In this document: in pieces, positions 2,239-62,377 of the stretch
Layout of the letters: each line of letters begins with the position of its first letter
Position numbering within the stretch: the stretch's first letter is position 1
Origin: Vitrella brassicaformis CCMP3155
Taxonomy: Eukaryota; Protista; Chromerida
NCBI GenBank assembly: GCA_001179505.1
Contig: CDMY01000027.1
Span: forward strand, 124,001 to 188,000
DNA: 64,000 nt
Direction of reading: 5' to 3'
Program-made: the position numbers and the translations under genes
Notes under the pieces: model-generated
The model's input: only the letters and a program-made list of their open reading frames with translations
The model's database searches: none
Told to the model about the DNA's origin: nothing

Positions 2239-2882
2239 TCCCACCCAGCCGACAACAGTCAGGTGTGTACTGTCAGTGAGTGATGCACTGCCAGTAATGA
2301 TGCAATGCATGTGTTGTCTGTCTTGTCCTTGACACAGGCAGGGTGCGGTGCGCGCGACTGTGGCGGCTTAGCTGCACGCCACGTGCCCTCTATCCATGTA
2401 TCTATGCCACCGATACACAGAGACAAACGGGACAAATATGATGTGTGGTTTGGTCTGGCCGACTGCGTGAGGCTTGTCCCTCCATGGCATGGGAGTGTCG
2501 TATGTGTGTGTGTGTGTGTGTTGGTCTTGTGCAGTGTGTGTGTGTGCATACTCAGTTGCGGTGACGAACCATGCAACTGAAGTTGCAGTGTACATATTAG
2601 ATTCTCTCTGATGACGGTGGCGGAGTGGTTGGTATTCACAGACTATAAAGGTCACTGACACACGTACACGCAGGCACCATGCCATGCACTCACACGGTCT
2701 GTCTGTCATCTCACTCACTCACGACATCCATGCCATGCAGCCAAATAAAGGGGTCTGTCGATCTGCAGTGTCCTCACAGCCATGACTGACTGATTTGAGT
2801 CCGCGCCATCCGTGGGCGCGGGCGCATGAGAGCTACAGCTATGCACACGTCGGTCCACCAGGCTGTCTCTGTCTGTTGCTGC

Positions 2883-59844: not shown

Positions 59845-60218
59845 CCCATGCGTGCTGACTTGGTTGGTGAGATAACGGCCACATCGTATTGATGGATTTT
59901 GTTGATTGATGACTACCCGATAGATGCGGTCTGTAACCGATTTGGTGCACCCCTGTGTCTGTCTGAGAGAGGGCTCGCCAGCAGCACAGAAACCACAGGC
60001 GGGGGCAGAAGTGCTCTGCTTTAGCAGACGCGGCATGTAGAGTCGCGTCCCTTCTGTCTTGTGTGCGTCTCTCATGGAGAGAATCCCTTCGAGAGACACT
60101 CGAGCTCGCAATTGCGATCGGGAGGAAGATCCCCTCGTTGACGGAGGAAAAAGGGAACACAAACACCACAGCAAAGCAGATCAGAGACGAACTGAATGCC
60201 AAGCATTCGTCAGCAGCC

Positions 60219-61884
60219 ATGACGTCGGCTGCCTCAGGCTGCATTCTTCTTCTCTTGGGGCCCGTCTTGTTGAGCGCCGAGGCCGTCGATGACGCCGTCC
60301 TTGACCTCTACAGGACACCAAGGGAGGGCTCGCTGTCTTATTACTGGAATCTGAGCGAGTCGCAACGCGGGACGTGCTTCCAGTGGCCTGAGCCGGCCGC
60401 CGGCAAGAATGGCGTGTGGACAAGGTGGGAGACACACACATTGTCAAGGATGTGCAACCAAGGCTTCTGGACTGCCCTATATGGCCAATCGACGCTGTCT
60501 TCTGCCTTTTTGTTGCAGCGTAGCGTTACCTGTCGTGTCGTCGCAGACCTTTTACGACGGGAGGACTTGCGGCATGTGCATCGAGTTCCTCCACACGGAT
60601 GTCGGCCGGGGGCCGCGCTACTTGGGGTCCAAACATGGAGGGCCAGAGGAGCACCAACCGCCAGCCAACGAGCGGACTCGTCTGTTTGTCAACAATGCGT
60701 GAGCTGCCGGCTGATACGTCCATGGAGACACACATCTGTGCCTGTGTCTGTCTCCATCTGCCCATGTTGCCGGCAGCTGTGGCGACTGCGAGTATGAGAA
60801 TCAGATGGACGTGTCGCTCAATAGCAGGTCGGCCTTGCACACACACCTACACACACACATATATGAGCGCACTCAGCAAAGGAAGACACAAAGATGACCA
60901 TCTTATGTCTTGTGTCGATCGGCAGGAAGGGGCTGTGGCAAGCGACCTGGGTGGCTGTGGACTGTGAGCCAGACACCACTCCCGTGCAGTTCATCTTCGG
61001 CCGTGGCTCCTCGGAGCACTTCATCGGGGTAGCCTGACTAACAGAGACATGGCCCAAACATCACGCCCATGTATTGTGTGTTAGTCTATCTCTTGGATGC
61101 AGTTGCAGGCCCGCAATCTGCCGATACCCGTCAAGGGTATCGAATACTACCATCCGATCAACGACAAGTGGTATACGATGAGCCAAGGCTTCACAGGTCT
61201 GCTCATATCGGCCGGCCATGCAGTGGATGAGAGAAAGGGTACATACTGACATGTGTTGTGTTATATCCGGTATGCATCACTCACTGGACGGACGCAGGCA
61301 TGTTCAAGTTCCAAGCGACAGAGACTGGCCTTGGCTGGCCCGACGAGCTCTTGAAGCCTCCATTGCGGGTTCGAGTCACCTCACTCAAGGCAAGCAACCA
61401 AGCAAGCCCCCTCAACCACCACTTCCCACATCCATCCCTGTCTCCCCCCTGTCCTGTTTGCCTTCAGGGGCAGGCTCTCGAGACAAATGTCTCCCGCATA
61501 GGGGAGGCCTTCGAGGTCATCGACTCTGATCCACCCATATTTTTTGAGGGCATCACGGGCGACGCCCCCACCGGCTCATGCACCGCAGTTGAAGAGGCCA
61601 GCAGGACGCCATGCGGCCCCTCAGACGTGAGTGAGAATGGCTGTGCGCTGCTCCACTGCTGCTGGAGTGGAGAGGGAGAGGAAGGCCCGTCGTGTTACCG
61701 CCGTGAGGGGGATGAGAGGACCGATTTGTCATCAGGTGGCCAACGTGTTACGGATCAGTACGACTCGAGTGCATGGAAGCCACACAGGAGGCTGCCGTGG
61801 CTGCTGGTTGGTGTGTTGGTCTGCGTCAGGTGGCTAGCTTGTCAACGACCCACCATTGCGCTGGCTGATGTGGTGATGTGGTGA
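60219..61884 (+). CDS. Expansin-like protein (DPBB plus CBM63-like) fused to a trefoil domain with C-terminal hydrophobic anchor
   Basis: Signal peptide; RGTC...VALPVVSSQTFYDGRTCGMCIEF...FVNNACGDC...MDVS...WVAVDC...QFIFGRGSSEHFIGLQARNLPIPVKGIEY...KWYTM; trefoil RTPCGPSDVSENGCALLHCCW; tail LPWLLVGVLVCV. Confidence 0.8.
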
Positions 61885-62377
61885 ATTTTTCCGTCCTATT
61901 TTTCGTCGACCGCAGGATGATAGGCTGGGTTGACTGGTGTGTGGGTGTGGGTGTGGGTGTAGGTTTGGGTGGATGTGGGTGTGGGTGGACGTGACGACTG
62001 TCCTTTGCTGTCTTTGGCAGTTTTGGACCCTGACTGAACTGTGAGCCTGTCTGCACTTGAAGCCTCTTCGTGTGTTGGTAGGAACACATGACACACGCTT
62101 TCAGAGGATCGGTCGTCTGTCTGTCTCTGTCCAGAGAGAGGGAAAAAAGACACAAATCACATGCACGCATCCCATGCACCCACCTAACCAACCAGTGCGG
62201 TCATTGTAAATCAGTTATTGTCCGTCAAGGCATTGCACGCACCCACATATGCACAGCGTATGCATGTTCATGCACACACAAGCGTCTCACTCATCGGCCA
62301 CGCCTGCCCGCGCCATCGCCTCCGATCCGACAGTTGTCCTCCAGCAGCTCAACCTACACTCACACATCAAATGATCA

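What the first reader, a model, noticed from the sequence alone, without database searches (positions are those of the whole stretch)
60219..61884. Expansin-like cell-wall loosening protein fused to a trefoil domain and membrane anchor in an alveolate
Seen: hand-spliced exons give a signal peptide, a Cys-rich DPBB-like domain (GTC...VAL...CGMCIEF...CGDC...MDVS...WVAVDC), a CBM63-like domain (FGRGSSEHFIGLQARN...PVKGIE...W), a trefoil at 61579-61698 whose R-x2-C-x-P-x3-S-x3-C-x4-C-C-W spacing fits the P-type signature, and a hydrophobic tail. Known: expansins loosen cellulose networks non-hydrolytically; the Asp in the xDLS motif is essential in Bacillus EXLX1 (here MDVS); trefoil domains bind glycans in mucins and glucosidases. 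Inference: a surface-tethered wall-remodelling protein for sporangium hatching or attachment to a host or substrate. I do not recall this fusion being described. Several introns show it is long established in this genome.
Basis: partly seen in the sequence, partly recalled or inferred. Interest (0 to 1): 0.8.

Follow-up and report, generated by a model that had tools for sequence, protein, structure and literature searches.

The report
Expansin–trefoil wall protein of Vitrella
A spliced, transcribed gene of the coral-associated alga Vitrella brassicaformis encodes a secreted expansin-type (cellulose-wall-loosening) protein with an added trefoil module and, in one mRNA form, a hydrophobic anchor; expansins were already reported in this species, but I found no description of this fusion.

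Summary
Window 60219-61884 (+) is a multi-exon gene of Vitrella brassicaformis; its public model, P0001, is named 'Expansin-like EG45 domain-containing protein'.

**Expansin part.** Pfam's own expansin models miss it. A profile of its 94 relatives matches Bacillus EXLX1 over both domains (E 4e-39). An AlphaFold model (pLDDT 85.5) superposes on expansin crystal structures (3D30: Z 20.0, 189 residues, 2.4 A). The key Asp of EXLX1 (D82) is conserved as D140. The aromatic cellulose-binding triad is only partly kept.

**Trefoil part.** It passes Pfam's cut-off (33 bits against 21) and has six Cys at canonical spacing.

**Transcript.** One spliced RNA contig joins all expansin exons to the trefoil. 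It corrects three things:
- Exon 5 starts at 61085, not 61103.
- Intron 6 is GC..AG.
- The public model's last intron (61627-61829), which destroys the trefoil, is not seen.

The hydrophobic tail lies in a 94-nt terminal intron (61736-61829). That intron is retained in RNA contigs of two runs and spliced in one. The closest paralogue has a homologous tail.

**Context.** Four paralogues share the expansin-trefoil layout. Vitrella expansins were reported by Chase et al.; the trefoil fusion was not. The scan's second note on this stretch (s1-233436) agrees. Function is inferred. This is a new variant of a known kind, of moderate interest.

The parts
60196..60222 (+). Short upstream ORF (8 codons) inside the transcribed 5' leader. 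Its TGA stop overlaps the main ATG (ATGA).
   Evidence: Read from the sequence. The RNA contig X6 record 8 starts at 60124.
60219..60424 (+). Exon 1: start codon, signal-peptide-like N-terminus (about 60219-60284) and the beginning of expansin domain 1 (GSLSYYWN motif; S40 aligns with T12 of EXLX1).
   Evidence: (joint 60424|60519).
60519..60698 (+). Exon 2: domain 1 core (CGMCIEF), plus a loop of low model confidence at residues 100-104.
60777..60827 (+). Exon 3: CGDC...MDVS motif. D140 is equivalent to the essential D82 of EXLX1.
   Evidence: Asp in 88 of 94 relatives.
60926..61028 (+). Exon 4: end of domain 1 (WVAVDC) and start of domain 2 (GSSEHFIG). H177 and F178 sit at the positions of W125 and W126 of EXLX1.
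61085..61196 (+). Exon 5 as seen in RNA.
   Evidence: joint 61028|61085, GT..AG, X6 record 8.
61298..61389 (+). Exon 6: rest of domain 2 (PLRVRVTSLK).
   Evidence: joints seen in X6 and X1.
61390..61467 (+). Intron 6, 78 nt, GC..AG. It is in frame and has no stop, so only RNA shows that it is removed.
   Evidence: X6 joint; the X1 loose end reads GGCAGGCTC, the start of exon 7.
61468..61735 (+). Exon 7: end of domain 2, a linker, the trefoil domain and an acidic stretch.
   Evidence: X6 record 8 runs unbroken from 61466 to 61740.
61579..61701 (+). Trefoil (P-type) domain with six Cys spaced C-x10-C-x9-C-x4-CC-x10-C.
   Evidence: 33 bits; spasmolytic protein, E 0.006; six of the seven listed fold matches, including the top four, are trefoil-bearing proteins, but not significant.
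61736..61829 (+). Terminal 94-nt GT..AG intron, alternatively retained. If retained, reading continues into the DQYDS motif and the hydrophobic tail (386 aa, stop 61882-61884). If spliced, the protein ends ...SSGG (339 aa, stop 61835-61837) with no tail. A 9-nt direct repeat, TCAGGTGGC, sits at both ends.
   Evidence: the spliced contig has depth 35 and a shorter side of only 21 nt; the retained form is seen in X6 record 9 (61711-61855) and X1 record 2 (61545-61749)..
61792..61842 (+). Hydrophobic C-terminal segment (LPWLLVGVLVCVRWLAC), a candidate transmembrane or GPI-signal tail.
   Evidence: Kyte-Doolittle 2.14; helix at residues 110-125; aligned with the tail of paralogue P0096/P0006.

Best explanation
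The gene encodes a secreted, non-hydrolytic, EXLX-type expansin of Vitrella brassicaformis. It has a signal peptide, a double-psi beta-barrel domain 1 with the conserved groove Asp (D140), and a CBM63-like domain 2.

A short linker joins this core to one C-terminal trefoil (P-type) module. In the mRNA form that keeps the last intron, a hydrophobic tail follows, which would hold the protein at the cell surface as a transmembrane or GPI-type anchor.

The most likely role is loosening of the alga's own cellulose-rich wall while cells and sporangia grow or open. In this reading the trefoil acts as an accessory binding module, taking the place that CBM1 or CBM2 holds in other microbial expansin fusions and making up for a weakened aromatic platform in domain 2. 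Splicing of the last intron would release a soluble form.

Shown here: domain identities, one transcript, expression, and a paralogue family with the same layout. Inferred: the target polymer, wall-loosening activity, the trefoil's ligand, the anchor type, and any regulatory use of the two mRNA forms.
For: **Identity.** P0001 is 100% identical to exon 1 and comes from V. brassicaformis CCMP3155.

**Expansin membership.**
- phmmer finds 94 relatives. Their profile hits EXLX1 (2bh0/3d30) at E 4e-39 over profile positions 26-229, and five other solved microbial expansin chains, plus plant EXPB1 and Phl p 1 more weakly.
- The AlphaFold model has pLDDT 85.5 and pTM 0.83.
- Foldseek's top 12 hits are all two-domain expansins.
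- VIA-align gives Z 20.0-20.6 to 9ms5, 7wvr and 3d30 over about 190 residues at 2.4-2.5 A. GH45, barwin, kiwellin and loosenin score Z 9.2 or less.
- D140 aligns with D82 and is Asp in 88 of 94 relatives.

**Trefoil.**

**One transcript.** X6 record 8 joins exons 1-7 and runs through the trefoil.

**Anchor.** The retained-intron form appears in RNA contigs of two runs from different studies. The tail aligns with that of paralogue P0096, and a transcriptome-derived ORF of that paralogue, P0006, ends in the tail.

**Family.**
- Paralogues on C625, C98, C368 and C77 carry expansin-like exons followed by a trefoil.
- The Vitrella copies (the C625 copy was not in the tree) form one clade, SH-aLRT 97, which also holds one metagenomic protein, P0005.

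**Substrate.** The wall of the sister chromerid Chromera velia is mostly cellulose and lies outside the cell (PMC9293442).
Against: - No biochemical or localisation data exist, and Vitrella's own wall has not been analysed.
- The domain 2 aromatic triad of EXLX1 (W125, W126, Y157) is H177, F178, T211 here, so cellulose binding may be weak.
- D71 of EXLX1 is Asn here. This is common in the family: 38 of 94 relatives have Asn.
- The RNA-supported exon 5 adds six residues inside domain 2. Their structural effect was not modelled.
- The trefoil lacks the Trp of the PWC[FY] motif; it reads GPSCY. Its ligand is unknown.
- The spliced, tail-less form rests on one contig with only 21 nt on its shorter side and a 9-nt direct repeat at the joint. 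It could be a reverse-transcription or assembly artefact.
- Contig depths cannot give isoform ratios.
Confidence: 0.6

Rival explanations
1. Adhesin reading. The protein mainly tethers the cell, or its wall, to foreign glycans such as coral mucus glycoproteins, or to other algal or substrate surfaces. The trefoil would be the working lectin and the expansin core a carbohydrate-binding scaffold rather than a loosening agent.
For: - In animals, trefoil modules occur in mucin-associated peptides and in egg-coat proteins; the matches were TFF1, TFF3, spasmolytic protein and ZP/choriogenin.
- Vitrella was isolated from a coral (PMC9293442).
- One isoform has a surface anchor.
- The domain 2 aromatic platform is weakened.
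Against: - The groove Asp needed for loosening in EXLX1 is conserved, which argues for retained expansin function.
- The trefoil lacks the Trp of the PWC[FY] motif.
- The genome has about 30 trefoil matches, so the module is a general building block there and not evidence of mucin binding.
Confidence: 0.2
2. Inert wall-component reading. The protein is a structural or binding-only part of the wall with no loosening activity, one member of a diversifying paralogue family that is drifting in function.
For: - Aromatic triad only partly kept: H177, F178, T211.
- Six-residue insertion in domain 2 in the RNA form.
- Paralogue P0008 has lost the key Asp, showing relaxed constraint in the family.
- Long branches in the clade.
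Against: D140, S40 and all the family's nearly invariant Cys residues are kept in this copy. The gene is transcribed and correctly spliced.
Confidence: 0.15
3. Hydrolase reading. The N-terminal domain is an active GH45-like endoglucanase or another single-domain DPBB protein (barwin, kiwellin, cerato-platanin, RlpA), not an expansin.
For: - Shared DPBB fold. GH45 structures appear at Z 6.4-8.2, and kiwellin, papain inhibitor and barwin at Z 8.4-9.2.
- The YYWN motif near the N-terminus recalls, from memory, the YWD motif of GH45.
Against: - Two-domain expansins score Z 17.6-20.6 and cover both domains.
- The profile match to EXLX1 spans domains 1 and 2.
- The residue after YW is Asn here, not Asp.
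Confidence: 0.03

Closest known systems
Bacillus subtilis EXLX1 (YoaJ; PDB 3D30, 2BH0) and other microbial expansins (9MS5, 9MS4, 7WVR, 4JCW)
   Same: The same two-domain fold (Z about 20, about 190 aligned residues, 2.4-2.5 A). Profile homology over both domains. The conserved Asp equivalent to D82. Secreted.
   Different: About 20% identity. Cys-rich domain 1. An extra loop at residues 95-120. H/F/T in place of the W/W/Y triad. Intron-bearing eukaryotic gene. C-terminal trefoil and hydrophobic tail.
Microbial expansin fusions: swollenin and CBM1-expansins of fungi; CBM2-, CBM32- and GH5-expansins of bacteria (Chase et al., bioRxiv 10.1101/637728)
   Same: An expansin core extended by an accessory carbohydrate-directed module.
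   Different: The accessory module is a trefoil (P-type) domain, which that survey does not list. It sits at the C-terminus and is followed by an anchor-like tail.
Vitrella paralogues P0096/P0006 (C625), P0002 (C98), P0003 (C368), P0004 (C77) and P0008
   Same: The first four have an expansin-like core followed by a trefoil. P0096/P0006 also has the DQYDS motif and a C-terminal hydrophobic tail. The paralogues in the tree form one clade; the C625 copy was not included.
   Different: 39-53% identity to P0001. P0002 ends straight after the trefoil. P0003 has an N-terminal hydrophobic segment that looks like a signal anchor and a long extension. Pfam scores one trefoil in P0004, but a second trefoil-like Cys stretch precedes it. 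P0008 has no trefoil and has Ala at the key Asp position.
Animal trefoil factors (TFF1-3, spasmolytic protein) and trefoil modules of GH31 glucosidases and ZP egg-coat proteins
   Same: Pfam Trefoil above the cut-off. Six-Cys spacing. A predicted short helix plus beta hairpin.
   Different: The Trp of the PWC[FY] motif is Ser. The module is fused to an expansin in a protist. The ligand is unknown.

Membership tests
Expansin (microbial EXLX type) | Two tightly packed domains: an N-terminal double-psi beta-barrel (GH45-like) and a C-terminal CBM63 / group-2 pollen-allergen-like beta sandwich | tested here: met
   AlphaFold model pLDDT 85.5. 3D30: Z 20.0, 189 of 208 residues, 2.4 A, model range 26-270. 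Phl p 2 on residues 163-262: Z 12.5. Foldseek's top 12 hits are all expansins.
Expansin (microbial EXLX type) | Sequence homology to characterised expansins | tested here: met
   A profile of 94 phmmer relatives of P0001 hits EXLX1 at E 4e-39 and 9ms5 at E 2e-41.
Expansin (microbial EXLX type) | Match to Pfam DPBB_1 (PF03330), EXPB1_D1 (PF22514) or Expansin_C (PF01357) | tested here: not met
   No Pfam family up to E 10 on P0001 or on the exon pieces. The own-genome six-frame scan with PF01357 found nothing, and its controls were silent too. Only 3-5 of the 94 relatives reach these models. The models are insensitive to this clade.
Expansin (microbial EXLX type) | Conserved groove Asp (D82 of EXLX1), required for wall extension | tested here: met
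   D140 in the MDVS motif aligns with the lDl/ALDLS column. Asp in 88 of 94 relatives.
Expansin (microbial EXLX type) | Other groove residues: T12 and D71 of EXLX1 | tested here: inconclusive
   S40 for T12 (conservative). N128 for D71; that family column is D in 51 and N in 38.
Expansin (microbial EXLX type) | Linear aromatic triad on domain 2 (W125, W126, Y157 of EXLX1) that binds cellulose | tested here: not met
   H177, F178 and T211 at the aligned columns. Only one clear aromatic is kept. The RNA form inserts SISWMQ next to this strand; that form was not modelled.
Expansin (microbial EXLX type) | Non-hydrolytic wall loosening (creep or filter-paper weakening without sugar release) | not testable with these tools
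   Needs recombinant protein and biomechanical assays.
Trefoil (P-type) domain | Pfam PF00088 above the gathering score, covering the whole profile | tested here: met
   33 bits against 21, E 5.3e-8, profile positions 1-42 of 43. The own-genome scan gives 34.9 bits at this place.
Trefoil (P-type) domain | Six Cys with canonical spacing, and the PROSITE-type signature (pattern recalled from memory) | tested here: met
   Cys at residues 38, 49, 59, 64, 65 and 76 of the last-exon translation. The pattern occurs once in the six frames of the window.
Trefoil (P-type) domain | Three-loop fold with 1-5, 2-4, 3-6 disulfides | tested here: inconclusive
   Model pLDDT about 76 over the domain, with a helix and two strands. 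The Foldseek top four are TFF1, spasmolytic protein, TFF3 and intestinal trefoil factor, but at E 0.47 or worse. Disulfide pairing was not examined.
Trefoil (P-type) domain | Conserved Trp before the last Cys (PWC[FY]) | tested here: not met
   The alignment to spasmolytic protein puts GPSCY against VPWCF. The paralogues have P[KQ]C[YF].
C-terminally anchored surface protein (transmembrane or GPI) | A C-terminal hydrophobic segment that is present in mature mRNA | tested here: inconclusive
   The segment exists (Kyte-Doolittle 2.14, predicted helix) and aligns with the tail of P0096/P0006. It lies in an intron that is retained in contigs of two RNA runs and spliced in one. The anchor type was not predicted; no such tool was available.

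The most novel reading that the evidence does not exclude
A chromerid-specific family of expansins took on an animal-type trefoil module. In this gene and its closest paralogue it also took on a C-terminal anchor. Retention or removal of a 94-nt terminal intron would switch this protein between a cell-surface-tethered form and a released form. That would give the alga a way to direct wall loosening either to its own growing wall or to the enclosing sporangium wall at hatching. A related intron-less copy on an AT-rich metagenomic contig hints that a large DNA virus may have captured a member of the same clade.
Probability: 0.2. Interest if true: 0.65.

Novelty: new variant of a known kind. Interest (0 to 1): 0.5.

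Why it matters
Expansins are the only known agents of irreversible cellulose-wall extension, and their roles outside plants are poorly understood.

Chromerids are the photosynthetic sisters of apicomplexan parasites and build an extracellular cellulosic wall. Here they turn out to have a small family of expansins with a module combination (trefoil, with or without an anchor) that does not appear in the published survey of expansin fusions.

That gives concrete candidates for the machinery that lets walled cells and sporangia of these algae grow and open. It also gives a natural test of what a non-CBM accessory module adds to an expansin.

Practically, the public gene model is wrong at its 3' end and hides the trefoil, so domain-based surveys will miss this member.

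Tried and rejected
**Searches that gave nothing useful**
- Pfam on single exons and on P0001: nothing for the expansin part.
- phmmer of exon 2, exon 4 and P0001 against PDB sequences: only chance hits or none.
- Own-genome six-frame scan with PF01357: no match, and the control genomes were silent too, so it is uninformative.
- Word-index protein search with P0001: only itself. The exhaustive search was therefore used.
- IMG/VR scan with the clade alignment: no relative.
- Atlas search with a 723-aa neighbour of P0005: no usable hit.
- Pfam on flanking ORFs of the window: nothing.

**Readings rejected**
- The public model's intron 61627-61829. RNA contigs of X6 and X1 run straight through its donor.
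- The trefoil as a separate gene or untranslated region. It is on the same spliced contig and in the same frame, and paralogues share the layout.
- Bacterial contamination. The gene has seven introns and spliced RNA.
- GH45 hydrolase, barwin or kiwellin. Z is 9.2 or less, against about 20 for expansins.

**Not done**

Full report
**What is there**

The window is contig C27:124001-188000 of a 72.7-Mb, 1064-contig genome. A search seeded with exon 1 returned one protein, P0001 (307 aa). It is 100% identical to exon 1, comes from Vitrella brassicaformis CCMP3155, and UniRef names it 'Expansin-like EG45 domain-containing protein'. Vitrella belongs to Alveolata.

**Transcript evidence**

Contigs of four public runs were laid on 60100-62100. 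Run X6 holds a 1112-nt spliced contig (record 8) with this structure: 60124-60424 | 60519-60698 | 60777-60827 | 60926-61028 | 61085-61196 | 61298-61389 | 61468-61740. Five of the six joints are GT..AG. The sixth, 61390-61467, is GC..AG once the cut is shifted within the tool's stated ambiguity. A second run, X1, shows the 61196|61298 joint and a loose end that reads into exon 7.

Three points follow:
- The trefoil (61579-61701) is on the same mRNA contig as all the expansin exons.
- The public model's intron at 61627 is not used. X6 record 8 and X1 record 2 both run through it.
Contigs show presence, not absence, so the 61103 acceptor may also be used.

Introns are 56-101 nt long.

**The C-terminus**

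One X6 contig skips 61736-61829 (GT..AG, 94 nt). After that splice the frame ends two codons later (...SSGG, stop 61835-61837), giving 339 aa with no tail.

X6 record 9 (61711-61855) and X1 record 2 (61545-61749) keep the intron. Reading then continues through DQYDS and a hydrophobic stretch to the stop at 61882-61884, giving 386 aa. The other introns have no depth in X6, so this is not general genomic contamination.

Two cautions apply. The spliced contig has only 21 nt on its shorter side, and the same 9-mer, TCAGGTGGC, stands at both ends of the skipped part. That is the pattern left by template-switching artefacts.

The tail itself looks real. The closest paralogue (C625; P0096, and the transcriptome-derived ORF P0006) has the same order of trefoil, acidic stretch, DQYDS and a 20-residue hydrophobic end in one open exon. 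A protein that ends right at a hydrophobic stretch preceded by small residues is, from general knowledge, as typical of a GPI signal as of a transmembrane anchor. I could not test this.

**Is it an expansin?**

Pfam's models do not see it, and neither does single-sequence phmmer against the PDB. The exhaustive search found 94 relatives at E 0.001 or better. A profile built from them matches:
- EXLX1/YoaJ at E 4e-39,
- five other solved microbial expansin chains at E 2e-41 to 3e-27,
- plant EXPB1 at E 8e-13 and Phl p 1 at E 2e-10.

The EXLX1 match runs end to end over both domains.

The AlphaFold model built with that alignment has pLDDT 85.5 and pTM 0.83. Foldseek's first twelve PDB matches are all two-domain expansins. 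VIA-align gives Z 20.0 to 3D30 (189 residues, 2.4 A) and 20.6 to 9MS5. Single-domain DPBB proteins and GH45 enzymes stay at Z 9.2 or less.

| EXLX1 residue | Role | Here | Family column (94 relatives) |
|---|---|---|---|
| D82 | Essential groove Asp | D140 | Asp in 88 |
| T12 | Groove | S40 | Thr in 64, Ser in 9 |
| D71 | Groove | N128 | Asp in 51, Asn in 38 |
| W125 | Domain 2 aromatic | H177 | Tyr 44, Trp 28, Phe 8, His 6 |
| W126 | Domain 2 aromatic | F178 | Tyr 64, Trp 12, Phe 9 |
| Y157 | Domain 2 aromatic | T211 | Asp 67, Tyr 10, Trp 3 |

Membership in the expansin superfamily is secure. Full conservation of the cellulose-binding face is not.

**Is it a trefoil?**

- Pfam PF00088 scores 33 bits against a cut-off of 21, over positions 1-42 of 43.
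- Six Cys are at canonical spacing, and the recalled signature occurs once in the six-frame translation of the window.
- phmmer against the PDB finds spasmolytic protein at E 0.006.
- A shallow-alignment model has pLDDT of about 76 over the domain. Six of its seven listed fold matches, including the top four, are trefoil-bearing proteins, but none is statistically significant for so small a domain.
- The Trp of the PWC[FY] motif is Ser here and Lys or Gln in the paralogues. I therefore make no claim about the ligand.

**Family context**

Six-frame searches of the genome find expansin-like exons followed by a trefoil on C625, C368 and C77. C98 also has expansin-like exons, and the protein annotated there (P0002) carries the trefoil. 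The annotated proteins P0096, P0003, P0004 and P0002 are named 'P-type domain-containing protein'. P0008 (945 aa) has the core but no trefoil, and has Ala at the key Asp position.

In a tree of 73 relatives the Vitrella copies form one clade (SH-aLRT 97) on a long branch, together with one metagenomic protein, P0005. The nearest named outsiders by phmmer score and tree path are from a heterolobosean, an amoebozoan and a rotifer. The rows left out of the tree had under 75% coverage of domains 1-2 and are listed. The fusion is therefore a lineage-specific innovation that predates several duplications. The genome has about 30 trefoil matches in all, so the module was available locally.

**What is known**

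Chase et al. (bioRxiv 10.1101/637728) list V. brassicaformis as the only alveolate with Exlx homologues, call its sequences extremely divergent, and list fusions only to CBM1, CBM2, CBM32 and GH5. No paper in the library pairs expansin with the P-type trefoil, or Vitrella with trefoil domains, in a relevant way.

The wall of Chromera velia is mainly cellulose, lies outside the cell, and also contains galactan-, xyloglucan-, xylan- and mannan-like material. Vitrella's wall has not been analysed (PMC9293442).

**Mechanism proposed**

The signal peptide would send the protein to the cell surface or wall. Domains 1 and 2 would bind and loosen cellulose junctions without hydrolysis, through the D140 groove. 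The trefoil would add a second binding site for a matrix glycan or glycoprotein, as CBMs do in other expansin fusions. The tail, when present, would keep the protein at the plasma membrane under the wall. Everything in this paragraph is inference.

**Left out**

The RNA-supported protein (with SISWMQ, the whole trefoil and the tail) has no stored reference. P0001 served for domains 1 and 2, and the last exon was used by reference for the rest.

**Verdict**

The expansin is known for this organism. The trefoil fusion, the anchor isoform and the corrected gene model are new but incremental.

Noticed in passing
window 60196-60222: An 8-codon upstream ORF (MPSIRQQP) lies in the transcribed leader. 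Its TGA stop overlaps the main start codon (ATGA), an arrangement that could couple or damp translation of the expansin ORF.
   Followed up: no
L021/L022 (ENA ERZ893782:k147_820274, 18,230 bp), gene at L022:10001-10810; also L023: P0005 is 40% identical to P0001 and is sister to Vitrella paralogue P0002 in the tree. It is an intron-less ORF on an AT-rich contig (24-46% GC) of densely packed short genes that mostly lack Pfam hits (one NUDIX, one weak AP2). The nearest Atlas cluster to P0002 by features is 100% Nucleocytoviricota (score 0.86, a lead only). A large DNA virus may carry a chromerid-type expansin. The IMG/VR scan was negative.
   Followed up: partly
own genome, e.g. C395:192163-192609, C249:55167-57280, C336:235142-235664, C414:60432-60536: About 30 matches to the trefoil profile, most of them over Pfam's cut-off, some in tandem arrays. 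That is a large set of a module best known from animals. I found no paper on it for chromerids.
   Followed up: partly
L017 (C625) about 2636-2866, minus strand: The genome encodes an ...ECD..FDVSDGSRGGKFQATWVAVDC stretch for the C625 paralogue. The public model P0096 lacks the part with the key Asp, so that model probably skips an exon.
   Followed up: no
paralogues P0004 (C77) and P0096 (C625), N-terminal motif: These two read YWD where this gene reads YWN. From memory, an Asp in a YWD motif is the catalytic base of GH45 endoglucanases, so some paralogues might retain hydrolytic potential. This was not tested.
   Followed up: no
P0008 (CEM30540.1, 945 aa, another contig): This sixth paralogue has Ala at the otherwise conserved groove Asp, a long Ser/Thr/Pro-rich extension and a weak PAN-like hit. 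It looks like an expansin-derived protein that has changed function.
   Followed up: no
window 60837-60874 and 61932-61995: A CA-rich repeat lies in intron 3 and a GTGGGT-type repeat just downstream of the stop. The reads tool skipped both as repeats, which explains the contig breaks there.
   Followed up: no
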